This document shows, in pieces, positions 17,338 to 29,870 of a DNA stretch of 64,000 nucleotides (position 1 is its first letter; each line of letters begins with the position of its first letter). The notes below the pieces were generated by a model, which searched no databases, was not told where the DNA came from, and saw nothing but the letters and a program-made list of their open reading frames with translations. Location: IMG/VR virus record IMGVR_UViG_3300042549_005931, positions 186,001-250,000 of that record. One strand, 5' to 3'. The position numbers were made by a program, and so were the translations under genes.

Positions 17338-17368
17338 TTGATTTTGTCAATACTTATATATACATTTG
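17338..17368 (+). promoter_or_regulatory. Bacteroidota-type promoter for leader 1/tRNA array 1
   Basis: TTG at 17338-17340 and TACATTTG (TAnnTTTG -7 element) at 17361-17368. Confidence 0.65.
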
Positions 17369-17390
17369 TAAAAATTAAATAAAACATTCA

Positions 17391-17492
17391 ATGAAACGCT
17401 TTACACATATCACGTTTACTACATTCGCAACCAAATGGTGTGCGATGGGTGAGATTGGTATGTCTCGAGGTTTCGATTGTAATATAGGATAG
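17391..17492 (+). CDS. attenuator leader peptide 1 (MKRFTHITFTTFATKWCAMGEIGMSRGFDCNIG)
   Basis: 33-codon ORF between promoter and terminator; codons match tRNA array 1; ends GGA TAG TAA. Confidence 0.8.
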   Translation: MKRFTHITFTTFATKWCAMGEIGMSRGFDCNIG

Positions 17493-17520
17493 TAAGAAAG
17501 TTTACATTAATATAATATAA

Positions 17521-17556
17521 GAACCTCGGGACAAAATCTCGGGGTTTTTTGTTTTT
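17521..17556 (+). terminator. attenuator terminator abutting tRNA-Ala
   Basis: GAACCTCGGGA-CAAAA-TCTCGGGGTT + T tract; 5' arm complementary to 17463-17473. Confidence 0.85.
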
Positions 17557-17626
17557 GGGCCGGATGTCAATGGCTGACCATCTGATTTGCAATCAGAATG
17601 AAAGGGTTCGATTCCCTACGTGTCCA
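17557..17626 (+). tRNA. tRNA-Ala(TGC)
   Basis: TCTGA-TTTGCAA-TCAGA anticodon arm, G3-U70, bulged acceptor stem. Confidence 0.8.
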
Positions 17627-17659
17627 CAGTATTAGTTCTTTGAAATCGTGGGTAAAATT

Positions 17660-17732
17660 GTCTATGTGGCGCAACGGTTAGCGCTCCGACCTGATACGTC
17701 GGCGGTTGGTGGTTCGAATCCATCCATAGACA
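17660..17732 (+). tRNA. tRNA-Ile(GAT)
   Basis: cloverleaf, loop CTGATAC. Confidence 0.92.
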
Positions 17733-17737
17733 CATTT

Positions 17738-17810
17738 GGAGACGTAGCTCAGTTGGTAGAGCACCGGCCTGAAGAGCCGGGTGTCGGTGGTTCAAATCCA
17801 CCCGTCTCCA
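17738..17810 (+). tRNA. tRNA-Phe(GAA)
   Basis: cloverleaf, loop CTGAAGA. Confidence 0.95.
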
Positions 17811-17816
17811 CATTTT

Positions 17817-17890
17817 GACCTCTTAGCTCAGTTGGTTAGAGCACCTCACTTTTAATGAGGGAGTCCCGCGTTCGAGTCGCGGAGGGGTCA
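17817..17890 (+). tRNA. tRNA-Lys(TTT)
   Basis: cloverleaf, loop CTTTTAA. Confidence 0.95.
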
Positions 17891-17895
17891 CACAC

Positions 17896-17967
17896 GCGTC
17901 TATGGTGTAATTGGCAGCATACCGGTCTCCAAAACCGGCGGTCGAGAATCGTTGTCTCGTGGACGTG
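17896..17967 (+). tRNA. tRNA-Trp(CCA)
   Basis: loop CTCCAAA; atypical T-loop ATCGTTG. Confidence 0.85.
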
Positions 17968-17972
17968 CAAAT

Positions 17973-18044
17973 AGTTCTATGGTGTAATGGATAGCACCTG
18001 ACACTACGGATGTCAAAGTTGGAGTTCGAGTCTCTATGGAACTA
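17973..18044 (+). tRNA. tRNA-Arg(ACG)
   Basis: cloverleaf, loop CTACGGA. Confidence 0.92.
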
Positions 18045-18052
18045 CGTTAAAA

Positions 18053-18127
18053 GGTGAATTGGCTGAGTGGTCAAAAGCAACGGTCTGCAAAACCGTACAA
18101 TCGTTGGTTCAAATCCAACATTCACCT
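18053..18127 (+). tRNA. tRNA-Cys(GCA)
   Basis: cloverleaf, loop CTGCAAA, U73. Confidence 0.92.
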
Positions 18128-18128
18128 C

Positions 18129-18203
18129 GGTGACTGTCGTCTAATGGTAGGACAAAGGTTTGTGGTGCCTTCAATAAGAGTTCGATTCTCTTCAGTCACA
18201 CCA
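18129..18203 (+). tRNA. tRNA-His(GTG)
   Basis: loop TTGTGGT, encoded G-1 and CCA. Confidence 0.9.
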
Positions 18204-18208
18204 TATAT

Positions 18209-18276
18209 TGCGGGGAGGAGGGTTCCCAACCAGTCTCATAAGCTGTGTTTTCCGGTTTCGACTACCGGCCCCGCAA
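18209..18276 (+). tRNA. tRNA-Met(CAT), atypical
   Basis: TGCGGGG/CCCCGCA acceptor, loop CTCATAA, shortened D-arm. Confidence 0.7.
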
Positions 18277-18340
18277 CAAAATATTTTAGATTTTTTTTAC
18301 ATATATTTTTTTATTTAAAAAACTTCTTTTATATTTGTCA

Positions 18341-18477
18341 TAAGATAATGGTTTTCACCATTCAACGGATGTCGACAATCCAGAGTGGAACCTGAAAACA
18401 TAACCCTCTGCCGAGCGCTCATAAAACTGAAGAAGCAGTCAAGAATGGAACGAAACGGGTATTCCATCATTATCTTA
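18341..18477 (+). ncRNA. unidentified structured RNA
   Basis: 12-bp closing stem TAAGATAATGGT/ATCATTATCTTA, internal stems, TATATTTG promoter just upstream. Confidence 0.55.
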
Positions 18478-18480
18478 CAG

Positions 18481-18554
18481 GCTCCCTTAGCTCAGTTGGC
18501 CGGAGCGCCTCACTTGTAATGAGGATGTCGGCGGTTCGAATCCGTCAGGGAGCT
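18481..18554 (+). tRNA. tRNA-Thr(TGT)
   Basis: cloverleaf, loop CTTGTAA. Confidence 0.95.
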
Positions 18555-18560
18555 CAACAA

Positions 18561-18701
18561 GGTTCTATAGTTGTTTAGGTCGCCCCTTAAACAATGAGTG
18601 GGTTAATGATGGTTTAGTATTACTACCCGATATTCTAGATGAAGCGTGGTAAGTGATTAAACAAGTAATTAACGAGATGGGTTCGATTCCCATTAGAGCC
18701 T
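18561..18701 (+). ncRNA. tRNA-like RNA (acceptor + T-arm, expanded interior)
   Basis: GGTTCTA/TAGAGCC acceptor, ATGGG-TTCGATT-CCCAT T-arm, no canonical anticodon arm. Confidence 0.6.
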
Positions 18702-18750
18702 CAAAACATAGGATTAATTACCCTATGTATGGATGGTTCGAAACATCCGA

Positions 18751-18824
18751 TTGATTATGGTGTAATGGTGCACGGAGACCGTAATTGGAGCTCAGGATTA
18801 AGGTTCAAGTCCTTTTTAATCAGC
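18751..18824 (+). pseudogene. degenerate tRNA
   Basis: TTGATTA/TAATCAG acceptor, TGGTGTAATGG D-arm, GGTTCAAGTCC T-arm, broken anticodon arm. Confidence 0.5.
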
Positions 18825-18829
18825 AACAA

Positions 18830-19215
18830 GTGACGACTGTGGTGTAACCCCACGGTATATGAAATCCAAAATGGTCCTGTTGAAGCCGGAATAGTCATAC
18901 AGGTCAGGAGAGAGTTAGTATAAGTTGGGAGTAATTAACCAATTGACGAAAACTAATCACCAAGAAATTGGTCATGATGTCCAACGGGGATAATAAACTT
19001 GTTAATTTGTTAATTTAAGTTCTGGTGGGTTTTATTAAATAATTTTGTTTCATTTTAAACAATTTTAGTTATAAGGAAGTTGAAGAATTGTAACCACCAA
19101 CATAGAAATTAGATTAACAAAGTTTAATTACGGGAGGTGTCTCGTATAACTAATACAATCCCCTAATAGGGACTGATGTAAGATTAAGATTCTTACGACA
19201 CCGAACGTGATTGGA
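18830..19215 (+). ncRNA. unidentified ~390-nt structured RNA
   Basis: nested long-range stems, no ORF. Confidence 0.45.
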
Positions 19216-19224
19216 TTATTAACC

Positions 19225-19299
19225 GCCCCTATCGACAAGCGGTTAAGTCACGTCCCTTTCACGGATGAGTCACGGGTTCGATTCCCGTTGGGGGTACCA
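19225..19299 (+). tRNA. tRNA-Glu(TTC)
   Basis: cloverleaf, loop CTTTCAC, CCA encoded. Confidence 0.95.
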
Positions 19300-19310
19300 A
19301 AAGTTTTATT

Positions 19311-19559
19311 ATGTTAGAACAAATATTGGAGTACTTTGGGGAAGAAGAATTTCTTAAAGCGGACGGATTCGATGAAGCCGTTATTGGTGTTGAAGAAAGT
19401 TCGATGAGACTAATCTATTCAGTTACCAAATGTCTTGAGATATTGGTTACCAATGAAGAGATGTCATTAGAAGAAGCTATTGAGTATTTTGACTTTAATG
19501 TTAGAAGTGCTTATGTAGGTGATAAAACACCCATTTGGTGTGAGGATGGTTTTATGTAA
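19311..19559 (+). CDS. hypothetical phage protein
   Basis: ADGFDEAVIG...EAIEYFDFNV...AYVG motif typical of large phages. Confidence 0.7.
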   Translation: MLEQILEYFGEEEFLKADGFDEAVIGVEESSMRLIYSVTKCLEILVTNEEMSLEEAIEYFDFNVRSAYVGDKTPIWCEDGFM

Positions 19560-19560
19560 T

Positions 19561-19749
19561 ATGAAAAAAATAATATATCTACTAATTGTAATTTTTACAT
19601 TATCCGGTTGTTTTACTTATGTAAGAGAAACTGGTAGATTTTACCCACGTAATAGAAATTTACAACCAAACCATAGAATGGGTATTAACGGTTACCATTT
19701 AAGAAATCAATATTATTTTAGACATATTCAACCATTAAAAAAAAGATAA
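19561..19749 (+). CDS. small lipoprotein
   Basis: MKKIIYLLIVIFTLSGC lipobox from ATG 19561. Confidence 0.6.
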   Translation: MKKIIYLLIVIFTLSGCFTYVRETGRFYPRNRNLQPNHRMGINGYHLRNQYYFRHIQPLKKR

Positions 19750-19791
19750 AGGATTGATTTTCAACATTTTTATATTTATAATAAAAAAGAT

Positions 19792-20139
19792 ATGTTAGAC
19801 TTAAAAGAACTTTTAATTATGCTAGGATTGGCGGTTGGTGGACCATCACACAGTCAAGATATGACTTTTTATCGACAAAAATTATCTAATGAAATGGTTT
19901 TAGAACAAAAACTAAAAGAAGAAATTAAAGCCTTAGAATATAGAAAACTTTGGGACGATGTAAATCAAAAAGAAAATGCAGATTTTGCAGTTAGGTGGTT
20001 TAAAGATAAAAAATCGGAAGATAAATTAGGTAGTTCAAAAAAAGATTTAAATAACACAAGAAAAAAAATAAAAGTATTAAAAAATATCCTTGAAAAAGAT
20101 TCATTAGATAAGGTAGTACCTCAAACTCAGGTACTTTAA
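19792..20139 (+). CDS. hypothetical coiled-coil protein
   Basis: ORF preceded by TATTTATA. Confidence 0.6.
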   Translation: MLDLKELLIMLGLAVGGPSHSQDMTFYRQKLSNEMVLEQKLKEEIKALEYRKLWDDVNQKENADFAVRWFKDKKSEDKLGSSKKDLNNTRKKIKVLKNILEKDSLDKVVPQTQVL

Positions 20140-20178
20140 TTTATTTTCGGATATTTATATATTATAAAAACAAAAATT

Positions 20179-20601
20179 ATGAAAAAATTATTATTTATTT
20201 TCGCGTTAGTTCTTGGTTGTACTTTTAGTTCAACTGCTCAAGAATTGTTTGGTTCCGCAACTAACAAAGGTATGGACGGATACTTAACTGGTGGTTACAT
20301 CAAAAAAGGATGGGGTGCCTATGTTGGTTTTAGATATGATGCTGACCCTATGGTTAGTACTAAAACAGGTAGCTTTGATAAAACTATGAAATTTGGTGTT
20401 ATTCGTATGTTTGCGAGTGAGAAAATTATGATGGGTGTGGGAATCCAACCTGTCGATAATGTTAACAAACCAAATGTTTTTATTGGTTACGCACCATTAA
20501 AATCGGAAGGATTGAAGATATGGGTTATTGGTAATTTAGTAGGTTCTAATTTTACACCAGGTCTTGGTTTAACTTATAAATTATCACAAATTAATTTTTA
20601 A
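20179..20601 (+). CDS. small outer-membrane beta-barrel-like protein
   Basis: signal peptide, Gly/aromatic beta strands, terminal Phe. Confidence 0.55.
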   Translation: MKKLLFIFALVLGCTFSSTAQELFGSATNKGMDGYLTGGYIKKGWGAYVGFRYDADPMVSTKTGSFDKTMKFGVIRMFASEKIMMGVGIQPVDNVNKPNVFIGYAPLKSEGLKIWVIGNLVGSNFTPGLGLTYKLSQINF

Positions 20602-20627
20602 AAATTTACTATTAAATAAAACTTTTG

Positions 20628-20635
20628 TATATTTG
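20628..20635 (+). promoter_or_regulatory. Bacteroidota-type -7 promoter element for leader 2
   Basis: TATATTTG 18 nt before leader ATG. Confidence 0.6.
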
Positions 20636-20653
20636 TATATACTTATTAGAAAA

Positions 20654-20758
20654 ATGAAGAATTTATTAACAACAATATCGCTTAGTTTGAACCCGTCATA
20701 TAATGATAATGGGAGAGGCGTGCAGACGTTAATAAGTTCGGACCAAATATTAGGATAG
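20654..20758 (+). CDS. attenuator leader peptide 2 (MKNLLTTISLSLNPSYNDNGRGVQTLISSDQILG)
   Basis: 34-codon ORF; codons match tRNA array 2; ends GGA TAG TAA like leader 1. Confidence 0.8.
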   Translation: MKNLLTTISLSLNPSYNDNGRGVQTLISSDQILG

Positions 20759-20781
20759 TAAATAAAAAAACTAAAATAAAG

Positions 20782-20822
20782 AAACCCGAACGACTTAAAA
20801 AATTGTTCGGGTTTTTTGTTTT
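20782..20822 (+). terminator. attenuator terminator before tRNA array 2
   Basis: AAACCCGAACGA/TTGTTCGGGTTT + T tract; 5' arm complementary to GTTCGG at 20736-20741. Confidence 0.85.
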
Positions 20823-20902
20823 AATGAAACTTTTACATATATTTGTAAAACAGTTCATCACATAGGTGGTGAAAAATGTTCTTTGACATTGTGAGAAAAA
20901 AT

Positions 20903-20987
20903 GCTCGGGTGGTGTAATGGTAGCCACGAAGGACTTAAAATCCTTTGGACAGAAATGTCCGTGCCGGTTCGAGTCCGGCCCCGAGTA
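20903..20987 (+). tRNA. tRNA-Leu(TAA)
   Basis: type II cloverleaf, loop CTTAAAA. Confidence 0.95.
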
Positions 20988-20989
20988 CA

Positions 20990-21099
20990 AATGTAATGAC
21001 TTAGAAATAAGTGACGGAACAGACGCTATGTATGAAATGGAAACTTTCGAAACTCGTATAAAAGAGTGAATTAGACACAAACCGTACAGACATTACATT
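20990..21099 (+). ncRNA. unidentified structured RNA between tRNAs
   Basis: AATGTAATG/CATTACATT closing stem, ACTTA-GAAA-TAAGT hairpin, ACGG/CCGT. Confidence 0.5.
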
Positions 21100-21104
21100 A
21101 AATT

Positions 21105-21178
21105 GGTTCCGTAGCTCAGCTGGATAGAGCAACTCTCTTCTAAAGAGTAGGTCTTTGGTTCGAATCCAAACGGAATCA
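21105..21178 (+). tRNA. tRNA-Arg(TCT)
   Basis: cloverleaf, loop CTTCTAA. Confidence 0.95.
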
Positions 21179-21183
21179 CATAT

Positions 21184-21258
21184 AGAGTAATGGGCTAATT
21201 GGTAAGCCGCTACATTTGGGTTGTAGACATCATGGGGGTTCGAGTCCCTCTTATTCTA
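21184..21258 (+). tRNA. tRNA-Pro(TGG)
   Basis: cloverleaf, loop TTTGGGT. Confidence 0.88.
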
Positions 21259-21266
21259 CATTAAAT

Positions 21267-21351
21267 GGTTTCGTTGCCGTAGTGGCCGAACGGTCCAGAC
21301 TGTTAATCTGGTGAGTAACATCCATCGTAGGTTCGAATCCTACCGAGACCG
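21267..21351 (+). tRNA. tRNA-Asn(GTT) with long variable arm
   Basis: loop CTGTTAA, G73, ~15-nt variable region. Confidence 0.85.
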
Positions 21352-21403
21352 CTTGACTTTTTCGAATATTTTATGTATTTATTGTTAACTAAAAAAATTA
21401 ATA

Positions 21404-21943
21404 ATGGGTAAGTACTTCGAAAAAATTATAGATTTAAGAAATCAAGGAAAAACATATAAGGAAATATGTGTTGAATTAAACTGTGCAATGTCAACAGTGT
21501 CATATCACTGTAAGTTAAATAAATTGGGTGGCCACACTGATAGACTGACAGATGAAGATAAGGTAGAACTTCAAAAATTATACAATGAAGTTGGCAGTTT
21601 AAAAAAAGTGGCTAAATTAAAAGGTTATGCATTTCAAACTGTTCAAAAATATGTAACAATAAAAAATAGAACAAAAAAAGTTTCAAAATCCGAAGCGGTA
21701 ATAGAATGGAGAAAAAGAACTAAGATAAAATTAGTTGAATATAAAGGTGGTAAATGTCAAATTTGTGATTACAATAAATCATTCAATGCATTACATTTCC
21801 ATCATATTAACCCAAATGAAAAAGATTTTTCAATATCAGGTAAATCATTATCATTTGACAAATTAAAAACTGAGGTTGATAAATGTATTTTAGTATGTTC
21901 AAATTGTCATTCTGAAATACATGAAGGTTTAATAACATTATAA
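21404..21943 (+). CDS. HTH + HNH homing-endonuclease-like protein
   Basis: CQIC...FHHINP...C.LVCSNCHSEIH; N-terminal HTH motifs. Confidence 0.85.
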   Translation: MGKYFEKIIDLRNQGKTYKEICVELNCAMSTVSYHCKLNKLGGHTDRLTDEDKVELQKLYNEVGSLKKVAKLKGYAFQTVQKYVTIKNRTKKVSKSEAVIEWRKRTKIKLVEYKGGKCQICDYNKSFNALHFHHINPNEKDFSISGKSLSFDKLKTEVDKCILVCSNCHSEIHEGLITL

Positions 21944-21944
21944 C

Positions 21945-22020
21945 ACCCTTATGGACAAACGGCAAAGTCACTGGTTTTAGGCACCAGGTTTTATAGGTTC
22001 GAATCCTATTAGGGGTACCA
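21945..22020 (+). tRNA. tRNA-Leu(TAG) with short variable loop
   Basis: loop TTTAGGC, 5-nt variable loop, CCA encoded. Confidence 0.85.
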
Positions 22021-22037
22021 ACTAAATTTTTAATATT

Positions 22038-22157
22038 ATGGCAGTTACATCAAAAAGAGTTGCAAAGAAAGCTAGTAAAGCTTTAAGTAGTAAAAAAACG
22101 AGTAAAACAACTAAGACTCTTGCAGGTAGTGCATTGAGACAAAGAAGAAAAAAATAG
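22038..22157 (+). CDS. small basic protein (MAVTSKRVAKKASKALSSKKTSKTTKTLAGSALRQRRKK)
   Basis: 39-aa ORF between tRNAs; not in ORF track. Confidence 0.7.
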   Translation: MAVTSKRVAKKASKALSSKKTSKTTKTLAGSALRQRRKK

Positions 22158-22162
22158 TAATT

Positions 22163-22245
22163 GGGAGTGTTGAGCAACGGTTGCTTAGCAGACTGTAAAT
22201 CTGTGGTCTACGACATTGGCGGTTCGAATCCGTCCACTCCCACCA
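22163..22245 (+). tRNA. tRNA-Tyr(GTA)
   Basis: type II, loop CTGTAAA, CCA encoded. Confidence 0.92.
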
Positions 22246-22258
22246 AAACAAAAAAACT

Positions 22259-22819
22259 ATGGAATTCATTTACAGAAGAGAAAACGTATTATCAAAAGAA
22301 CAATGTGATGAGATAATACAAAAGTTTGAAGAGTCTGATTTTAAATTGGCAGGTATTACCGCATCAGGTGTTAACGAATCTATTAAAAAATCTACAGACC
22401 TTACATTTCATCATAATACTTTAGATGATGAAAAAATTAATAATCTTTGGGGTGATACTGTTCGTAAAATTGTTCGTGATTTAAATTATCACATGAACAA
22501 ATACAAGGAGGAAAATGAATACTTGAAATTTTTTAAAATAGAGATGGATTCATTCAACATTCAAAAGTACGAACCAAATGGTGGATTTTATACTTGGCAT
22601 TGTGAAACCATTCATTGTTTAGATAGAGTTACCGCTTGGATGATATATCTTAATGATGTTGATGATGGTGGTACTGAGTTTATGAAACAAAAACACACGG
22701 AGAAAGCTGAAGCGGGTAAGTTAATTATATGGCCAGCAGATTGGACACATGCACATCGAGGTCAGGTTAGCACTACCAAAACAAAATATATTTTAACAGG
22801 TTGGTTTAGTCAAAAGTAA
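22259..22819 (+). CDS. 2OG-Fe(II) oxygenase (prolyl-hydroxylase-like)
   Basis: WHCE, YLNDVDDGGTEF, THAHRG, KYILTGW. Confidence 0.85.
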   Translation: MEFIYRRENVLSKEQCDEIIQKFEESDFKLAGITASGVNESIKKSTDLTFHHNTLDDEKINNLWGDTVRKIVRDLNYHMNKYKEENEYLKFFKIEMDSFNIQKYEPNGGFYTWHCETIHCLDRVTAWMIYLNDVDDGGTEFMKQKHTEKAEAGKLIIWPADWTHAHRGQVSTTKTKYILTGWFSQK

Positions 22820-22820
22820 T

Positions 22821-23387
22821 ATGGAATTCATTTATAGAAAAGAAAATGCATTATCATTAGATTTATGTAATGATATAATTACTAAATTTAATGAATCTAA
22901 TTTACCTGAACCGGGTGTAGTAGGAAAAGGTGTAGTTGAAGAAATAAAAAAATCGATAGATTTATCTTTCCATGCCGATTCATTAAACACTAAAGAATTA
23001 CAAGATATATGGGGTCCACCATTGGGTGAAAGTATTCCAATTATTAATTCATGTGTTCAAGAATATTGTGATAAATTTGAATATTTGAAAATGATGAGTT
23101 CATTTAAAATGGAAGCTTTTAATATTCAAAAGTATGAACCGGGTGGTGGATTTTATACTTGGCATTGTGAAGCTACTTTAAAAATAAGACGTGTTGTTGT
23201 TTGGATGGTTTATTTAAACGATGTTGACGATGGAGGAACCGAATTTATACATCAAAACCATATCGAAAAAGCGGAAGCTGGTAAATTATTGTTGTGGCCG
23301 GTTGATTGGACACATGCACATAGAGGACAAATTAGTTATACCAAAACAAAATATATTTTAACAGGTTGGTATTCTATACCCCAATAA
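22821..23387 (+). CDS. 2OG-Fe(II) oxygenase, tandem paralog
   Basis: same motifs, high identity to previous gene. Confidence 0.85.
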   Translation: MEFIYRKENALSLDLCNDIITKFNESNLPEPGVVGKGVVEEIKKSIDLSFHADSLNTKELQDIWGPPLGESIPIINSCVQEYCDKFEYLKMMSSFKMEAFNIQKYEPGGGFYTWHCEATLKIRRVVVWMVYLNDVDDGGTEFIHQNHIEKAEAGKLLLWPVDWTHAHRGQISYTKTKYILTGWYSIPQ

Positions 23388-23434
23388 TCGTTGAAATATA
23401 CGATAACAGATTTTATCGTTAGATTAAACGATAT

Positions 23435-23508
23435 GGACTTATAGCTCAGATGGTTAGAGCAGGTCGCTCATAACGACAAGGTCACAGGTTCGAGCCCTGT
23501 TTGGTCCA
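23435..23508 (+). tRNA. tRNA-Ile2(CAT, lysidine type; reads ATA)
   Basis: loop CTCATAA; GGACTTATAGCTCAG body resembles Ile2 rather than Met. Confidence 0.75.
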
Positions 23509-23588
23509 CAAAAAGTGTCTTGGTATGCTCTGACGAAAGTCAACGACAAGGTCTCGGTAGGCAGAACGCGTCTGATTCTACCCAAAAC

Positions 23589-23662
23589 AGAAGATTAGCT
23601 CAGTTGGTTAGAGCATTTGGTTTACATCCAAAGGGTCATAGGTTCGAATCCTATATCTTCTA
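23589..23662 (+). tRNA. tRNA-Val(TAC)
   Basis: cloverleaf, loop TTTACAT. Confidence 0.92.
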
Positions 23663-23729
23663 CAGAAAACTGAGATAGGATATTATTGATATGGATACAA
23701 TTCCTGATAATATTGCTACTCAGTTGATT

Positions 23730-23805
23730 GCGAAAGTAGCTCAGTTGGTAGAGCATTACCTTGCCAAGGTAAGGGTCGCGAGTTCGAATCTCGTTTTTCG
23801 CTCCA
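23730..23805 (+). tRNA. tRNA-Gly(GCC)
   Basis: cloverleaf, loop TTGCCAA, CCA encoded. Confidence 0.95.
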
Positions 23806-23919
23806 TAAGGAGCTCCCGCTTTAAGGTGAAGGACACGCGGGCGAATAACTTTCAGGGTAAGTTGTAAAAGAACTCGAAACCTTAAGTCTAGTGTGGGAGA
23901 GACTCCTACCCACACACAA

Positions 23920-23991
23920 GCGAATATAGCACAGCGGTTAGTGCTCTGGTCTTCCAAACCGGAAACGACAGTTCGAATCTGTCTATTCGCT
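23920..23991 (+). tRNA. tRNA-Gly(TCC)
   Basis: cloverleaf, loop CTTCCAA. Confidence 0.93.
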
Positions 23992-24000
23992 CTATTAATC

Positions 24001-24073
24001 GGGATTGAGGTCAAACGGTTAAGATGTCGCCCTGTCACGGCGCACGGAGCGGGTTCAACTCCCGTCAGTCCCG
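24001..24073 (+). tRNA. tRNA-Asp(GTC)
   Basis: cloverleaf, loop CTGTCAC. Confidence 0.9.
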
Positions 24074-24076
24074 CAT

Positions 24077-24147
24077 TCCTCTATGGTGTAACGGTAACAC
24101 AACTGTTTTTGGTGCAGTTATTCATGGTTCGAATCCATGTAGGGGGT
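24077..24147 (+). tRNA. tRNA-Gln(TTG)
   Basis: cloverleaf, loop TTTTGGT. Confidence 0.92.
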
Positions 24148-24150
24148 CAA

Positions 24151-24347
24151 TGAGTAAGAGATACTCAGCAGTCTTTAATCCAAGACTCATTTAAAAATGG
24201 ATAGGATAATAGACTGGACATCCTTAAACGCCAGTCTCTTGGGAATAAAGCTGGAAAATCGTCCTTGCTCCCAGTAACGATTGACTTTTTAATGAGGGAT
24301 GCCTCGCAGGTTTTTCAAACAGCTAAATAACCGAAATAACTACTCAC
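24151..24347 (+). ncRNA. unidentified ~200-nt structured RNA
   Basis: TGAGTA/TACTCA ends, GACTGG/CCAGTC hairpin, potential pseudoknot AATCGT/ACGATT. Confidence 0.55.
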
Positions 24348-24372
24348 ATATAATCTCAATGTGGGGAAACAA

Positions 24373-24454
24373 GGAGAGGTGGACAATGGTCGTTGAGCGG
24401 TCTTGAAAACCGTCGGGTGTAAAAGCTTTGCAGGTTCGAATCCTGTCCTCTCCG
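24373..24454 (+). tRNA. tRNA-Ser(TGA)
   Basis: type II, loop CTTGAAA. Confidence 0.9.
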
Positions 24455-24511
24455 CACCCTACAATCCCATGTCGGCTCGAGTGGGTGAGAGTATAGGTAT
24501 CGGGCCCTTAT

Positions 24512-24600
24512 AGAGGGTTGGGTGAGTGGCTTAAACCAGCAGTTTGCTAAACTGCGGATGGGGTTAAACCTGTCCACCGGTTCGAATCCGGTATCCTCTA
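24512..24600 (+). tRNA. tRNA-Ser(GCT)
   Basis: type II, loop TTGCTAA. Confidence 0.93.
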
Positions 24601-24614
24601 CACTATTTATATGA

Positions 24615-24809
24615 ATGATATTACAACTTAATCCAACAATACCAATTATACGTGTAAGTGACGGAATGAAAGGTTACGCATTTATGGTTATCGATTATTC
24701 TCAAGAACATGATTTATATTTCACATGTGGAATGGATGATGGTGAAATTTGGACATTAAATAACAAAGAAATTAGGTTACAAAATAACATTACGTTAAAT
24801 AGAAATTAA
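24615..24809 (+). CDS. hypothetical protein
   Basis: 64-aa ORF MILQLNPTIP... Confidence 0.7.
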   Translation: MILQLNPTIPIIRVSDGMKGYAFMVIDYSQEHDLYFTCGMDDGEIWTLNNKEIRLQNNITLNRN

Positions 24810-24812
24810 CAT

Positions 24813-24964
24813 TGTAGTGTGACGAAATTGGCAGACGTACCCTCCTGTCTCGGGGGTGTGGAACAAGAAATAGATTGATAATATTAGGGGGTAGACCACC
24901 AGCTTGCAAGCGTCATGTTATCAGTTGAATCTCCACTTGAGTGGTTCGAATCCCTCCACTACAG
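24813..24964 (+). ncRNA. tRNA-like RNA (GTC loop) with ~80-nt variable arm
   Basis: TGTAGTG/CACTACA acceptor, D-arm, CCCTC-CTGTCTC-GGGGG arm, long paired insert, GGTTCGAATCC T-arm. Confidence 0.7.
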
Positions 24965-24966
24965 CT

Positions 24967-25812
24967 ATGAAAATATTATTTATTAACGATTTCCAAGGTG
25001 TTGATTATTTAAATGATACCATATTTCACGGTGGACGAAGTCTATTTGGTGAAAATTTTGTAGAATCAAATGATGCTTGGTACATGTATGATGATATAAC
25101 ACCACACACCAAAAGTTCATTATATGGTATGGGGTTTACTATTGCAGGTAAATTAAATAGGATATCTATCGACACCACTAATATTCTTGAAAAAATTAAA
25201 GATAGGTTTTTTGATTTAATAATTTATGGTTCAGTTCATAGAAATATTTCTTATTTTGATGAAGTAATCAAATCATATAAATCAAATGAAATTGTTTTTT
25301 TAGATGGTGAAGATGAAACATATTTTAATGAAAAAATAATTGGATATGGGGTTTATTTTAAAAGAGAATTAATCAAAGAAAGAGAATGTGTTTTACCAAT
25401 AAGTTTTAGTATTCCAAAAGAATTGATTAATATTAATACATGTAAAGAAAAAGTTTTAGCAATGCCTTCATCTTATGAAACGGGATATATTTTTAATAAA
25501 GAAAATGATTATTATGAAGAATATAAAAAATCATATTTTGCATTAACAAAAAAGAAAGGCGGATGGGATTGTTTAAGACATTATGAAATATTAATGAATG
25601 GTTGTTTACCATTGTTTCATAATTTACACGAATTACCCAAAAATATAATGATTCATTGGGATAAAAATTTGTTACAAGAATGCCTCAATCTATTTTGGGA
25701 ATTCAGATTAGATGAACAAAAATACATAAATTTAAAATCTCGAGTTGTTGATAATCTCCATAATAATTTAACAACTGAAAGTATGGTTAATTATATATTA
25801 TCAAAATTATGA
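24967..25812 (+). CDS. putative glycosyltransferase
   Basis: true start ATG 24967 (MKILFINDF); KKGGWDCLRHYEI...GC.P GT-B-like motif. Confidence 0.6.
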   Translation: MKILFINDFQGVDYLNDTIFHGGRSLFGENFVESNDAWYMYDDITPHTKSSLYGMGFTIAGKLNRISIDTTNILEKIKDRFFDLIIYGSVHRNISYFDEVIKSYKSNEIVFLDGEDETYFNEKIIGYGVYFKRELIKERECVLPISFSIPKELININTCKEKVLAMPSSYETGYIFNKENDYYEEYKKSYFALTKKKGGWDCLRHYEILMNGCLPLFHNLHELPKNIMIHWDKNLLQECLNLFWEFRLDEQKYINLKSRVVDNLHNNLTTESMVNYILSKL

Positions 25813-25866
25813 TAGGACACTACAGCTAAACCATTAAAATATTAATTGATAAAATGAAAAAATAAA

Positions 25867-26328
25867 ATGAAACAATTCAAAACCCTCCATGGTAAACCGA
25901 TACCAGAGGTTGTAGAGTACATCAAGGATTACATCTCAACAAGAGAGAATGTTCAAATTCTCATCGGTTCCGACTCACAATGTTATGCTAACACAAAGAC
26001 CGTTTACGGTGTTGTTATTGCTCTTTACACTTCCGGTAAAGGTGCACATGTATTGTGTACACGTGAGACGGTTCCTATGGAGAGGAATATGAATCTTCGT
26101 TTAATGACTGAAGTTTGGAAGTCTATTGAACTTGCAGAATATCTTAGAGAAAACGGTATTCAAAAAGCCGACTTTATTGATATTGATTTAAACCCTGATA
26201 GAAAATACAAATCAAACAGTTCTTTAAGACAAGCAATTGGTTTTGTTGAGGGTATGGGTTATCAAGCAAGATGGAAACACGAAGGTGCAATTATAACATA
26301 TGCCGCTAATCATTTAGTAAGATTATGA
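25867..26328 (+). CDS. RNase H-like YkuK (DUF458) family protein
   Basis: IGSDSQ...RLMTEVWKS...IDLNP motifs. Confidence 0.75.
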   Translation: MKQFKTLHGKPIPEVVEYIKDYISTRENVQILIGSDSQCYANTKTVYGVVIALYTSGKGAHVLCTRETVPMERNMNLRLMTEVWKSIELAEYLRENGIQKADFIDIDLNPDRKYKSNSSLRQAIGFVEGMGYQARWKHEGAIITYAANHLVRL

Positions 26329-26527
26329 GCAAGGATATGGACCGTCTTAGTGAAGACAATTACAAACAACGAAATGAATCTTATATTCAGAGACTTCGAG
26401 ATGAACGTGAAGAGAAATTAAAGAAACGTTATGAAGAATTGAGAGGAACAAAACTGGAAGAAAAAAAAGAAGATAAATGATTTCGTATTTTAAAATTTTT
26501 TATTTATATTTTTAAAAAATAAGAAAT

Positions 26528-26737
26528 ATGAAATGTATCAAAAGTAAAGACGGTGAGATTCGTCGAGTGTCAGATGTAGATGCTGACAACAAAGTTAAAG
26601 TACATGGATGGAAGTTTGTACCGAAGTCTGAATGGAAATTAAACGTAAGAGGTTCGGTAAATGTTAAACAAAACGCACCGAAAGAAAAGAAAGAAAAAGT
26701 AGTTAGTGAGTACAAAGAAAAAAAATCAAAAAAATAA
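26528..26737 (+). CDS. small basic hypothetical protein
   Basis: IRRVSD...GWKFVPKSEWK. Confidence 0.65.
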   Translation: MKCIKSKDGEIRRVSDVDADNKVKVHGWKFVPKSEWKLNVRGSVNVKQNAPKEKKEKVVSEYKEKKSKK

Positions 26738-26835
26738 TTTAATATATTTTGTTTTTTAAATTTTTTTTCGTAAGTTTGTAAAAGAAATCACAACGGTGGT
26801 TTTTTAAAAGAGAAAGTTCTTTGAATTAAAGATAT

Positions 26836-27603
26836 CGGCGGTCTATAGTCGTTAAATAAACTACGAAAGTAGGATAAAGTGAATCGAAAGTTATAAACGG
26901 TTTGCGGTTTCGGTAACGGAACTCGAGTAGACAAGCAAGACATCATCTGTCCTTAGTTCCGAGGGTAACACTGTAGGAAATGGATAGGTGACTTGGCAAT
27001 CTGAGTTGTCAAGTTGAGGTGGGAACACTAATAAGAGTAACTTGTGGAACTTTACAAGAAATGGGACCTCCAATCTCACTATTGTGTTGTTCAATATCAT
27101 GGGTACCTTAAAATCGAAAGGTATGGTGAAGTACGAGTGGTGTCGTTATCATCCTTAATAAAACCCTACCAAGAGTTTTATTTTGAAGGTGTCCAAAAGT
27201 ATGGAGGTTGGGAGACTTCAGAGAGTAGTTTAGTATTCTGTTGTTCAAAAGATAATGGAGCTGGCAGACGGGCCACTACTTTCAAGATTCGGAAACAAAA
27301 AACCCTTACAATGGTGTAAATCAAAAAAAAGGAAAAGTGCTCGTCAGTCGTTGGAAACAGGTGACTACATAGTCGTGAGATGTTCACGGCCATAGAAGAC
27401 CCCAAGTCCGATATGATTTTTGAGAAAAGTTCTATATAGTGCGGCGGTATTGTATAGAGAAGAGTAACGAGAGAGTATTCAACGACTTAAGGATTGGTTA
27501 ATCTAATTGACCGTCACTGATTGGTACAGTTCAAAAGACTGTGGATAAGAGAAGAATCAATAATGTCTCTAAAGTCAATCACAAAATGGTGTAATCTCAG
27601 CCA
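26836..27603 (+). ncRNA. giant structured ncRNA, GOLLD-like
   Basis: ~770-nt purine-rich non-coding tract with many hairpins, own TAAGTTTG promoter and boxA-like site, near tRNA arrays of a phage. Confidence 0.6.
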
Positions 27604-27736
27604 AATTAAAAAGACATTTTTAGGTTTCTTGGAACCATAATAATCCAAGTGGTGGAATTAACCTTAATCGGTTGGCCCTTAGGGATGGAGAAATCTATCC
27701 CTTTTTTTATTCATTTATTTTATTTATATTTGTTTT

Positions 27737-28483
27737 ATGAGAATCGTTTGTATTTCTGACACCCATGACCTTCATCAAAAGATGACACATAAGTTACCGA
27801 AAGGTGATGTGTTAATCCATGCGGGTGATGTTAGTAATATTGGAGAACAACCCGATGTAACACGATTTATTCATTGGTTCATGAATATTGAAGGATATGA
27901 TTCTAAAATATTTATTGCCGGTAATCACGACTTTGCATTTGAGAGAATTAATGAACCACACCATAAAGGTGATTTTGAATGGTTATCTAATTTAATCAAT
28001 GAAGAAAATCTATCTCAATCTAATGTAACATATTTGGAAGATAATTTCATTACCATTGAAAGTCCTGAATTCTCAAGACCAATTAAGATTTATGGTAGTC
28101 CTTGGCAACCTGAATTTTATAATTGGGCATTTAACTTACCACGTGGTGGTGATGATATGTTTGAGAAATGGAATATGATACCCGATGATACAGATGTATT
28201 AATCACACACGGACCGGCAGAGAATGTTAGGGACTTTGTTCCTAATGGTCAAATCGTTGGTTGTGGTATGTTAAGACATCGTATTGAAACAATTAGACCG
28301 GCATTACATGTATGTGGTCACATACATTACGCATACGGTGTGTCTTTAGTTAATAGTATTATGTATGTGAATGCGGCAATATGTGATGAAAGATATTCAC
28401 CATCAAATAAACCTATTGTCATTGACCTAAAAGAAGTTGATGGCGAGATTTTAGCTTACTTAGTAGAAGATGAATCCAATTAG
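27737..28483 (+). CDS. metallophosphoesterase
   Basis: SDTH, HAGD, AGNHD, THGP, GHIH motifs. Confidence 0.9.
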   Translation: MRIVCISDTHDLHQKMTHKLPKGDVLIHAGDVSNIGEQPDVTRFIHWFMNIEGYDSKIFIAGNHDFAFERINEPHHKGDFEWLSNLINEENLSQSNVTYLEDNFITIESPEFSRPIKIYGSPWQPEFYNWAFNLPRGGDDMFEKWNMIPDDTDVLITHGPAENVRDFVPNGQIVGCGMLRHRIETIRPALHVCGHIHYAYGVSLVNSIMYVNAAICDERYSPSNKPIVIDLKEVDGEILAYLVEDESN

Positions 28484-29422: not shown

Positions 29423-29468
29423 ATTGGTATAGTAAAATATTTTACATACATTTGTAAAACATTTACAT

Positions 29469-29870
29469 GGGGATGACCGGCATTTGACTGGCGTTTGTAT
29501 TGTAAGTGGGCACGTAGTCAGACTTCATCTATGACTTAAATAAACGGTGGAAACTTTTAGACGGCAACGTTTACAAAAACATGGAAATTGCGGGTATTCT
29601 TGCAACTTCTAACGTAGCAGTAGCCTAAGGCAAACCTACAACGGGTCGACTGACATATAACCTAGGAACAGAAGTCTTCAAAGTGTGATACCACTCAGAG
29701 TGTCAAAGGTCTCGTTCAGAGTGCTACCTTAAGTGAACTCGACACAGTTATTGGTAACGATGTCAAAATAGGAACCAATTATTTGTCTATTGAGAACTAA
29801 TAGAATAAACGTGTAGTCCATTTATTATTCGGCGGACAGGACCAGGGTTCGAATCCCTGCATCTCCACCA
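29469..29870 (+). ncRNA. ssrA: tmRNA
   Basis: GGGGATGA...GAC 5' end, GGTTCGAATCCC...CTCCACCA 3' end, tag ORF GNVYKNMEIAGILATSNVAVA* at 29563-29628. Confidence 0.93.

What the first reader, a model, noticed from the sequence alone, without database searches (positions are those of the whole stretch)
17635..26824. rrn-like boxA (and boxB-like) antitermination signals in front of the non-coding operons
GTTCTTTGA occurs at 17635-17643 (array 1), 20878-20886 (array 2) and 26816-26824 (giant ncRNA). The latter two are preceded by related hairpins ATCACA-TA/AC-GGTGGT. The motif resembles rRNA-operon boxA, which binds NusB/NusE. Inference: the phage recruits host rrn antitermination to protect long untranslated transcripts from Rho.
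Basis: partly seen in the sequence, partly recalled or inferred. Interest (0 to 1): 0.6.

Follow-up and report, generated by a model that had tools for sequence, protein, structure and literature searches.

The report
Ribosomal boxA signals before phage RNAs
A large freshwater phage places the same short signal that its host phylum (Bacteroidota) uses at the start of ribosomal RNA operons in front of its own tRNA arrays and its giant GOLLD RNA; related phages do so almost without exception, which suggests these phage RNAs are made by the host's rRNA-style, termination-resistant transcription machinery.

Summary
GTTCTTTGA sits at 17635, 20878 and 26816 on the + strand. These are the only exact intergenic copies in the 269-kb phage record, and each lies 12-16 nt before a stable-RNA gene. 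The 9-mer is not enriched genome-wide (7 copies against 8 for a reversed control), so the signal is positional.

- **Match to host rrn boxA:** It is the most widely shared 9-mer in 102 Bacteroidota 16S upstream regions (46 exact, 32 more with one mismatch). It recurs in the 16S-23S spacer after tRNA-Ala.
- **GOLLD leaders:** In 82 of 82 dereplicated IMG/VR GOLLD leader groups, GTTCTTTGA (69), GTTCTTTAA (12) or GTTCTTTGT (1) lies 38-150 nt before the GOLLD core. It usually follows a TAnnTTTG promoter box and a hairpin that keeps its pairing while its sequence changes.
- **Other RNAs:** It also precedes tRNA genes, and tmRNA genes in some relatives.

The most likely function is an rrn-type Nus-factor loading site (hairpin, then boxA). 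It would make host RNA polymerase processive and Rho-resistant, and possibly a folding chaperone, on untranslated phage RNAs. NusB/S10 binding and antitermination are inferred, not shown. I found no paper linking GOLLD or phage tRNA arrays to boxA. Novelty: new variant of a known kind.

The parts
17361..17368 (+). Bacteroidota-type -7 promoter box (TACATTTG). It is the only recognisable promoter upstream of array 1 and drives a 33-aa ORF (17391-17492).
   Evidence: kept in relative G002
17524..17550 (+). Terminator-like hairpin plus U run, between the small ORF and array 1.
   Evidence: identical in G002
17557..17626 (+). Weak tRNA-like element with a UGC-type anticodon loop, directly upstream of boxA-1. 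tRNA then boxA is the order seen in the rrn spacer.
   Evidence: Rfam RF00005 32.5 bits; not called by ARAGORN
17635..17643 (+). boxA-1 (GTTCTTTGA), ending 16 nt before tRNA-Ile. No hairpin.
   Evidence: kept in G002 while the 5' flank differs
17660..19299 (+). tRNA array 1. Seven tRNAs lie at 17660-18203, then tRNA-Thr at 18481 and tRNA-Glu at 19225. About 1.6 kb has no ORF of 60 aa or more except one inside the tRNAs.
20838..20845 (+). -7 promoter box TATATTTG of array 2, directly after a terminator at 20785-20817.
20856..20871 (+). boxB-like hairpin 2: CAUCAC-AUAG-GUGGUG.
   Evidence: G002 has CACCAU-AGAG-AUGGUG, one pair changed on both sides and one U.G changed to C-G
20878..20886 (+). 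boxA-2 (GTTCTTTGA, followed by CATTGTGAG), ending 16 nt before tRNA-Leu(UAA).
   Evidence: The extension resembles the host spacer form GTTCTTTGACATATTGG.
20903..24601 (+). tRNA array 2: 14 tRNAs interleaved with an HNH endonuclease ORF and two 2OG-Fe(II) oxygenase ORFs.
26771..26778 (+). -7 promoter box TAAGTTTG of the GOLLD unit.
   Evidence: 71 of 82 GOLLD leaders have TAnnTTTG within 90 nt upstream of boxA, median 28 nt
26782..26805 (+). boxB-like hairpin 3 (core AUCAC-AACG-GUGGU, extended by A-U pairs).
   Evidence: A hairpin is present in 63 of 82 GOLLD leaders, and covariation is supported.
26816..26824 (+). boxA-3 (GTTCTTTGA), ending 12 nt before the conserved GOLLD 5' core.
26837..27603 (+). 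GOLLD RNA: the 5' core starts at 26837, and the Rfam 3' domain is 27221-27603.
   Evidence: RF02032 280.4 bits; 5' core pattern; 18 RNA-seq runs hold part of it
27682..27708 (+). Intrinsic-terminator-like hairpin plus U run that closes the GOLLD unit.

Best explanation
The three GTTCTTTGA copies are rrn-type boxA elements written into the 5' leaders of phage stable-RNA transcription units.

Proposed mechanism:
- Host RNA polymerase starts at Bacteroidota-type promoters (TAnnTTTG).
- The nascent RNA first forms a small hairpin (boxB-like) and then exposes GUUCUUUGA.
- The host NusB-S10 (NusE) dimer binds this as it binds the identical element in the host's own 16S leader and 16S-23S spacer.
- With NusG and NusA it converts the polymerase into an rRNA-style antitermination complex.
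- That complex runs through the untranslated tRNA arrays and the roughly 0.8-kb GOLLD RNA without Rho-dependent termination or long pauses. By keeping the 5' end tethered, it may also help these RNAs fold and be processed.

Shown here: identity with the host phylum's rrn boxA, sense-strand position just upstream of stable-RNA genes, invariance across diverged phages, and the rrn-like order of hairpin then boxA.

Inferred: Nus-factor binding, resistance to Rho, and any chaperone effect.
For: (a) **Identity with host rrn boxA.** It is the top shared 9-mer in 102 Bacteroidota 16S upstream regions: 46 exact and 32 with one mismatch, median 134 nt before 16S. That is about 70-fold denser than further upstream, and three control words (reversed, reverse complement, one scramble) gave zero in the leaders. 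In the spacer, 27 of 36 have GTTC[T/A]TTGA after tRNA-Ala, extended as CATATTGG/AA. The 16-mer in whole host genomes mapped to rrn operons wherever sampled.

(b) **Position in this phage.** These are the only 3 exact intergenic copies, all sense strand and all 12-16 nt before an RNA gene.

(c) **Conservation.** All three sites are kept in relative G002. An unrelated 635-kb phage has promoter-hairpin-boxA before a tRNA and hairpin-boxA before GOLLD.
- A search pattern containing no boxA found 123 GOLLD loci in 82 leader groups. All 82 carry GTTCTTTGA (69), GTTCTTTAA (12) or GTTCTTTGT (1).
- Positions 1-7 are invariant, 8 is G in 85% and 9 is A in 99%, while the flanks carry under 1 bit.

(d) **Specificity.** In 1.17 Mb of viral loci there are 170 copies: 110 before GOLLD, 24 within 60 nt before a same-strand tRNA, and 36 elsewhere. 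Four scrambled controls gave 8-25 copies, none in those positions. Of the remaining distinct sites, 19 are in ORFs and 14 are noncoding, several of the latter before tmRNA-like starts.

(e) **Independent genome.** In a 99%-complete phage (G004), 4 of 8 copies lie in the RNA zone and the other 4 in ORFs.

(f) **Hairpin.** It is present in 63 of 82 leaders, with a median folding z of -2.3. In the tested alignment, 82% of cells are paired against 66% when shuffled, all 6 pairs show changes on both sides, and the covariation score is 0.343 against 0.131 (0 of 500 shuffles).

(g) **Factors.** NusB and NusG models hit Bacteroides thetaiotaomicron in the control set. NusB, S10, NusG and Rho are catalogued for Bacteroidota, and boxA is described as sufficient to nucleate the rrn complex (PMC13753749, PMC10250234).
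Against: - No experiment shows that the Bacteroidota rrn motif binds NusB/S10, so the name boxA rests on position and on similarity to the E. coli and Bacillus elements.
- The 9-mer is not enriched genome-wide.
- In this window the tmRNA (promoter 29447) and the tRNA-Thr unit (promoter 18330) have no boxA.
- Site 1 has neither promoter nor hairpin, and it lies behind a terminator-like hairpin.
- The GOLLD unit is only about 0.9 kb and ends in an intrinsic-type terminator.
- tRNA arrays are highly structured and the genome is 32% G+C, so they may be poor Rho substrates and the need for anti-Rho protection is not evident.
- Read-level RNA evidence for the leader could not be obtained.
Confidence: 0.72

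Rival explanations
1. The motif does recruit the rrn machinery, or is otherwise read as RNA, but its main role is maturation. It would tether the 5' end for co-transcriptional folding or mark RNase processing of GOLLD, tRNA and tmRNA precursors, with little or no role against Rho.
For: boxA sits only 5-25 nt from mature 5' ends of tRNA and tmRNA genes and 12 nt from the GOLLD core here. GOLLD is a large RNA that assembles into a 14-mer cage (10.1101/2024.12.08.627333). The rrn complex is proposed to act as an RNA chaperone, and boxA mutations reduce 30S quality in E. coli (PMC10250234). AT-rich, structured RNAs are poor Rho targets.
Against: The distance from boxA to the GOLLD core varies from 38 to 150 nt, which argues against a fixed processing site. 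No convincing leader-trailer helix was found around GOLLD; RNAduplex gave only interrupted pairing, with no shuffled control. This rival is not exclusive of the main explanation.
Confidence: 0.15
2. Decoy: abundant boxA-bearing phage RNAs soak up NusB/S10 and so depress host rRNA synthesis during infection.
For: The motif is identical to the host rrn signal. There are several copies per phage on RNAs that metatranscriptomes show to be expressed.
Against: A decoy would not need to sit precisely at the 5' end of each stable-RNA unit on the sense strand. It also would not need to keep the rrn-like order of promoter, hairpin and boxA. No data exist on stoichiometry.
Confidence: 0.04
3. DNA-level site: an operator or promoter-proximal element for a phage or host DNA-binding regulator, unrelated to Nus factors.
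For: It often lies close to the -7 box, as little as 8-15 nt away in some tRNA leaders.
Against: It is strictly strand-specific, with 0 reverse-complement copies in the leaders. Its distance from promoters varies from 15 to 88 nt. It also occurs after tRNAs with no promoter, and the same word sits in host rrn spacers far from any promoter.
Confidence: 0.04
4. Passive relic: the motif was carried in with pieces of host rrn spacers or tRNA genes and has no function in the phage. Alternatively, the three copies are a chance coincidence.
For: Site 1 has the spacer-like order of tRNA-like(UGC), boxA, tRNA-Ile(GAU). The raw 9-mer count is at background.
Against: The motif is invariant in 82 of 82 diverged leaders while the flanks carry under 1 bit. 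Scrambled controls never fall at those positions. A homing-endonuclease insertion in G002 left the leader intact.
Confidence: 0.03

Closest known systems
rrn leader and spacer antitermination signals (boxB-boxA-boxC), which nucleate the rRNA antitermination complex rrnTAC (NusB, NusE/S10, NusA, NusG, S4, SuhB)
   Same: The core word is the same as in Bacteroidota 16S leaders and 16S-23S spacers. The order is the same: promoter, hairpin, then boxA. The distance from the promoter is similar (median 28 nt in phage leaders, 46 nt in host leaders). The element sits upstream of untranslated, structured RNA, and a second copy after a tRNA mirrors the spacer.
   Different: It is carried by a phage and precedes tRNA arrays, GOLLD and, in relatives, tmRNA rather than rRNA. 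No leader-trailer helix was found. A boxC equivalent is only hinted at (CATATTGG). Binding and antitermination are untested.
Lambdoid phage nut sites (boxA-boxB with N protein)
   Same: A phage uses a host Nus-factor loading word in its nascent RNA to make host polymerase termination-resistant.
   Different: nut has boxA 5' of boxB and needs phage protein N, which binds the boxB loop. Here the hairpin is 5' of boxA (the rrn order), the hairpin sequence is not conserved between lineages, and the downstream genes are RNA genes rather than delayed-early protein genes. I did not search for an N homologue.
boxA upstream of CRISPR arrays and of suhB in Gammaproteobacteria (cited in PMC13753749 and PMC5725501)
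   Same: boxA is reused outside rrn. For CRISPR arrays it serves to carry polymerase through a long untranslated array of short RNA genes, which is the closest functional analogy to a tRNA array.
   Different: Those are chromosomal and gammaproteobacterial, with the word GYTCTTTAANA. Here the setting is phage-borne and Bacteroidota-type. At suhB, boxA promotes rather than prevents Rho termination, so the sign of the effect cannot be assumed.
Specialised NusG paralogues (UpxY of Bacteroides, RfaH, LoaP) with operon-specific leader signals
   Same: They provide operon-specific processive antitermination in the same host phylum. This phage also encodes a NusG-family protein.
   Different: Those systems are recruited by other leader or DNA signals (ops-like), not boxA. 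Four other large GOLLD/boxA phages have no NusG homologue, so boxA use does not depend on one.

Membership tests
rrn-type boxA (Nus-factor loading site) | Sequence matches the boxA of the host clade's own rrn operons | tested here: met
   GTTCTTTGA is the most shared 9-mer in 102 Bacteroidota 16S leaders: 46 exact, and 43 copies in 30.3 kb against 8 in 388 kb. It is also in the 16S-23S spacer. The 16-mer mapped to rrn operons in host genomes wherever sampled. The exact host species is unknown.
rrn-type boxA (Nus-factor loading site) | Lies in the transcribed leader on the sense strand, promoter-proximal, upstream of the genes it serves | tested here: met
   Sites 2 and 3 lie 32 and 37 nt after the TAnnTTTG boxes. 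All three lie 12-16 nt before RNA genes. There were 0 reverse-complement copies in 82 leaders. Transcription start sites are predicted, not mapped.
rrn-type boxA (Nus-factor loading site) | rrn order: a boxB-like hairpin 5' of boxA | tested here: met
   Hairpins lie at 20856-20871 and 26782-26805. A hairpin is present in 63 of 82 GOLLD leaders, with covariation support and a compensatory change in G002. This is not met at site 1.
rrn-type boxA (Nus-factor loading site) | boxC-like element 3' of boxA that pairs with a trailer | tested here: inconclusive
   Phage tRNA leaders share CATATTGG with host spacers, and the window has CATTGTGAG at site 2. No clear leader-trailer pairing was found around GOLLD.
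rrn-type boxA (Nus-factor loading site) | Bound by NusB-NusE (S10) | not testable with these tools
   No RNA-protein binding test is available. The host phylum has NusB and NusG (control genome; PMC13753749). The phage has no NusB.
rrn-type boxA (Nus-factor loading site) | Confers read-through of Rho-dependent terminators | not testable with these tools
   This needs reporter or in vitro transcription assays.
Lambda-type nut site | boxA 5' of boxB, with the boxB loop recognised by an N-like phage protein | tested here: not met
   The order is hairpin then boxA in the window and in most of the 82 leaders. Hairpin stems and loops differ between lineages. I did not search for an N homologue.
GOLLD RNA (RF02032) | Match to the Rfam covariance model above the gathering score | tested here: met
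   280.4 bits against a 150-bit cut-off at 27221-27603, over the full model length.

The most novel reading that the evidence does not exclude
Across a whole clade of freshwater Bacteroidota phages, the stable RNAs (GOLLD, tRNA arrays, often tmRNA) are produced by the host's ribosomal-RNA transcription machine, because each unit carries the host's rrn boxA. If so, GOLLD biogenesis, and possibly its folding into the 14-mer cage, depends on an rrnTAC-like chaperoning polymerase. The boxA variant a phage carries (GTTCTTTGA, GTTCTTTAA or GTTCATTGA) would then have to match its host's NusB/S10, making it a readable host-range marker. In this particular phage, a phage-encoded NusG homologue might replace host NusG in that complex to shut Rho out.
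Probability: 0.45. Interest if true: 0.75.

Novelty: new variant of a known kind. Interest (0 to 1): 0.62.

Why it matters
GOLLD is one of the largest bacterial and phage non-coding RNAs. Its structure is solved (a 14-mer cage), but its function and biogenesis are unknown. A universally conserved host rrn boxA in its leader gives a concrete, testable handle on how the RNA is made and which host factors it needs.

It also extends N-independent, rrn-type antitermination to phage tRNA arrays. The closest analogy is boxA in front of CRISPR arrays. This would explain how large phages express long untranslated gene arrays in hosts that have Rho.

For annotation, the unit of promoter, hairpin and GTTCTTTGA is a simple marker for the starts of stable-RNA operons in Bacteroidota phages. 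It may also hint at the host order.

Tried and rejected
- **Genome-wide enrichment of the 9-mer:** absent (7 copies against 8 for the reversed control). The claim therefore rests on position and comparison, not on count.
- **Relative found through the neighbouring 302-aa protein (L001):** it has no RNA genes and no motif excess, so it was uninformative.
- **The cultured or deposited 'phages' collection:** only one distant GOLLD hit, an uncultured 635-kb phage.
- **Leader-trailer helix for GOLLD:** only interrupted pairing, with no shuffled control, so not claimed.
- **Phage NusG as a general partner of boxA:** rejected, because four other large GOLLD/boxA phages lack it.
- **Extra RNA families in 18195-19230:** nothing beyond tRNA-Thr.
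- **Read-level RNA evidence:** They lie upstream of the GOLLD promoter and are not part of the finding.
- **Literature:** no paper in the searchable library joins GOLLD with boxA, NusB, antitermination or Rho. The library lacks most subscription journals, so absence there is not proof of novelty.

Full report
**What the window is.** The window is bases 186001-250000 of a 269-kb IMG/VR virus record with 32% G+C and a CheckV completeness of 81%. All of its 22 ARAGORN tRNA genes and its tmRNA lie in one + strand block at window 17.6-29.9 kb. That block also holds a GOLLD RNA (RF02032, 280 bits, 27221-27603). Promoter-like sites in the block are of the Bacteroidota type, with a TAnnTTTG -7 box.

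**The observation.**
- GTTCTTTGA is at 17635, 20878 and 26816 on the + strand and at 13329 on the - strand, the last inside a 643-aa ORF.
- The count is unremarkable. The record has 7 copies against 8 for the reversed word.
- The positions are remarkable. With ORFs masked, the three sites are the only exact intergenic copies in the record.
- All three are on the sense strand. Sites 1 and 2 end 16 nt before tRNA-Ile and tRNA-Leu(UAA), and site 3 ends 12 nt before the conserved GOLLD 5' core.
- Sites 2 and 3 follow a -7 box by 32 and 37 nt. Each has a hairpin in between: CAUCAC-AUAG-GUGGUG and AUCAC-AACG-GUGGU.
- Site 1 is different. It follows a weak tRNA-like element (17557-17626) and has no promoter or hairpin of its own. 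The only promoter upstream (17361) drives a 33-aa ORF that ends in a terminator-like hairpin.

**Is it the host's rrn boxA?** I fetched 120 Bacteroidota loci with a pattern on the 5' end of 16S rRNA.
- In the 102 upstream regions of 300 nt or more, GTTCTTTGA is the most widely shared 9-mer. It is exact in 46, and 32 more have one mismatch (GTTCATTGA 13, GATCTTTGA 8).
- It lies a median 134 nt before 16S, and behind TAnnTTTG boxes.
- Its density is 43 copies in 30.3 kb of leader against 8 in 388 kb further upstream. Three control words (reversed, reverse complement, one scramble) gave 0 in the leaders.
- The same word recurs in the 16S-23S spacer 18-153 nt after tRNA-Ala in 27 of 36 loci, extended as GTTC[T/A]TTGACATATTGG/AA.
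- In five whole host genomes the 16-nt form has 10 matches, 8 of them in one genome (7 identical plus one variant). Three sampled copies all lie inside rrn operons, and the one variant had no RNA gene nearby.

That this element binds NusB/S10 in Bacteroidota is established knowledge only by analogy with E. coli and Bacillus (PMC10250234, PMC13753749).

**Conservation in other phages.**
- A 49-kb relative (G002) keeps all three sites. Its site-2 hairpin reads CACCAU/AUGGUG, with one pair changed on both sides, in an otherwise nearly identical leader. An HNH endonuclease gene has been inserted between boxA and tRNA-Leu without disturbing the leader.
- An unrelated 635-kb uncultured phage has promoter, hairpin and GTTCTTTGA before a tRNA, and hairpin and GTTCTTTGA before its GOLLD.
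- A pattern taken from the GOLLD 5' core, containing no boxA, retrieved 123 usable loci. These fall into 82 groups of upstream sequence. All 82 carry GTTCTTTGA (69), GTTCTTTAA (12) or GTTCTTTGT (1), 38-150 nt before the core. Reversed and reverse-complement controls gave 0.
- Anchored on the motif, positions 1-7 are invariant, position 8 is G in 85% and position 9 is A in 99%. The flanks carry less than 1 bit.
- 71 of the 82 have a TAnnTTTG box within 90 nt upstream.
- 63 of the 82 have a hairpin in the 35 nt before boxA (median z -2.3), with many different stem sequences.
- On an alignment of 27 leaders, 82% of cells pair (66% when shuffled; 19-49% when slid). All six pairs show changes on both sides, and the covariation score is 0.343 against 0.131 (0 of 500 shuffles). 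That alignment misplaces the window's own hairpin by a few columns, which lowers rather than raises the score.

**Specificity for stable-RNA genes.**
- In 1.17 Mb of these viral loci the word occurs 170 times: 110 before GOLLD, 24 within 60 nt before a same-strand tRNA (mostly as GTTCTTTGACATATTGG, the host spacer form), and 36 elsewhere.
- Four scrambled words occur 8-25 times and never in those two positions.
- Of the remaining distinct sites, 19 are inside long ORFs and 14 are noncoding. Most of the noncoding ones lie behind a promoter or a tRNA.
- 7 of 20 distinct tmRNA leaders have GTTCTTT[G/A]A about 5 nt before the tmRNA, and six more have one-mismatch forms by eye.
- In an independent 291-kb, 99%-complete phage (G004), four of the eight copies lie in the RNA zone: before tRNA-Gln, before tRNA-Leu, 245 nt before tRNA-Met, and before GOLLD. 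The other four are in ORFs.

**Exceptions in the window.** The tmRNA (promoter 29447, essentially leaderless) and the unit behind the 18330 promoter (a hairpin and a structured 130-nt leader, then tRNA-Thr) have no boxA. The protein-coding gene behind the 27725 promoter has none either, as expected.

**How it most likely works.** The proposal has five steps.
- Host polymerase starts at the phage promoters.
- The nascent RNA presents a hairpin and then GUUCUUUGA.
- Host NusB-S10 binds it.
- With NusG and NusA, an rrn-type complex forms that resists Rho and pausing on RNA that no ribosome protects.
- By tethering the 5' end, the complex may also assist folding and processing.

The sequence and architecture parts are shown here; the factor binding and the effect are inferred. 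The host phylum has the factors (PMC13753749). The phage has no NusB.

The phage does encode a 175-aa NusG-family protein with NGN and KOW domains (TIGR00922, 99.9 bits, below the 135.7-bit equivalog cut-off) at record 70731-71258, outside the window. Four other large GOLLD/boxA phages lack such a gene, so it is not a general partner.

Arguments against the anti-Rho purpose are that the RNAs are structured and AT-rich, and that the GOLLD unit is short and ends at an intrinsic-type terminator (27682-27708). For that reason I keep a maturation or chaperone role as the main rival. The two are not exclusive.

**Expression.** Eighteen RNA-seq runs from 13 or more studies, mostly freshwater metatranscriptomes, hold 33-43% of the sampled words of 26740-27740. 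This RNA or close relatives are therefore transcribed in nature.

**Novelty.** boxA-dependent antitermination is well known for rrn operons and lambdoid nut sites. It has been extended to suhB and CRISPR arrays (PMC5725501, PMC13753749). I found no paper that links GOLLD or phage tRNA arrays with boxA, Nus factors or Rho, within a library that lacks most subscription journals. The GOLLD structure preprint says nothing about termination or a leader. I rate this a new variant of a known kind: an N-independent, rrn-type signal carried by phages in front of their stable-RNA genes, and apparently universal in the lake-type GOLLD lineage sampled here.

**Limits.**
- The GOLLD core pattern was drawn from three sequences of this lineage, so '82 of 82' describes that lineage and not all GOLLD RNAs.
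- Intergenic space was defined by a simple greedy ORF mask, not a gene caller.
- The host species is unknown. The phages use GTTCTTTGA or GTTCTTTAA and never the GTTCATTGA form seen in the named Flavobacteriaceae loci sampled (Polaribacter, Arenibacter, Christiangramia). This only hints at hosts outside that family.

Noticed in passing
G000:C1:70731-71258 (- strand; outside the window; L261:4734-5258:-): The phage encodes a 175-aa NusG-family protein with NGN and KOW domains. Its best match is NusG proper (TIGR00922, 99.9 bits, below the 135.7-bit cut-off), with weaker matches to LoaP, UpxY and RfaH. Four other large GOLLD/boxA phages lack a NusG homologue.
   Followed up: partly
window 17361-17550 and 20628-20817: Both tRNA arrays are preceded by a similar cassette: a TAnnTTTG promoter, a 33-34-aa ORF ending in ...(I/L)G with the shared tail AGGATAGTAA, and then a terminator-like hairpin. 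Between the window and G002 the first ORF differs by in-frame 3-nt indels. Array 1 has no promoter after this terminator, so its transcription may depend on read-through; an attenuator role is possible but untested.
   Followed up: partly
window 18204-18480, 18556-18830, 18830-19224: About 1.2 kb inside array 1 has no ORF and no Rfam hit. It contains tRNA-like pieces: a GCGGGG...CCCCGC acceptor-like stem at 18210-18275, and a 143-nt element at 18558-18700 with an acceptor-like stem and a T-arm. It also contains a 130-nt leader behind the 18330 promoter, closed by a long-range stem.
   Followed up: partly
window 17557-17626 and 24001-24073: Two tRNA-like genes are seen only by Rfam (32.5 and 50.1 bits) and not called by ARAGORN. 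The first has a UGC-type anticodon loop and a poorly paired acceptor stem.
   Followed up: no
window 21404-21943; L141:13220-13708 (- strand): HNH homing-endonuclease-type ORFs sit inside the tRNA arrays, at different places in the window and in relative G002. In G002 the ORF lies between boxA-2 and tRNA-Leu. A further copy of ACAACACTATCGTTCTTTGA precedes a small ORF between tRNAs in G002 and G001.
   Followed up: partly
window 22259-23387: Two tandem 2OG-Fe(II) oxygenase paralogues (186 and 188 aa) are embedded between tRNA blocks.
   Followed up: no
window 29447-29870: The phage tmRNA (tag GNVYKNMEIAGILATSNVAVA) has its own promoter ending 1 nt before the predicted 5' end, and no boxA. By contrast, 7 of 20 distinct tmRNA leaders in related phages have GTTCTTT[G/A]A about 5 nt upstream.
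   Followed up: partly
host loci L013-L132: The rrn boxA variants differ between the named loci sampled. The named Flavobacteriaceae loci (Polaribacter, Arenibacter, Christiangramia and others) show GTTCATTGA. Chitinophagales, Sphingobacteriales, Cytophagales and many Bacteroidales loci show GTTCTTTGA, and one Sphingobacterium 16S leader shows GTTCTTTAA. This might be usable as a host hint for boxA-bearing phages.
   Followed up: partly
L027, L039, L047, L074, L077: Contigs with a Bacteroidota-type 16S 5' end sit in assemblies labelled Metamycoplasmataceae, Eubacteriales, Clostridia, Microcoleus and Saccharibacteria. These are probably mis-binned contigs.
   Followed up: no
They lie upstream of the GOLLD promoter.
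   Followed up: no
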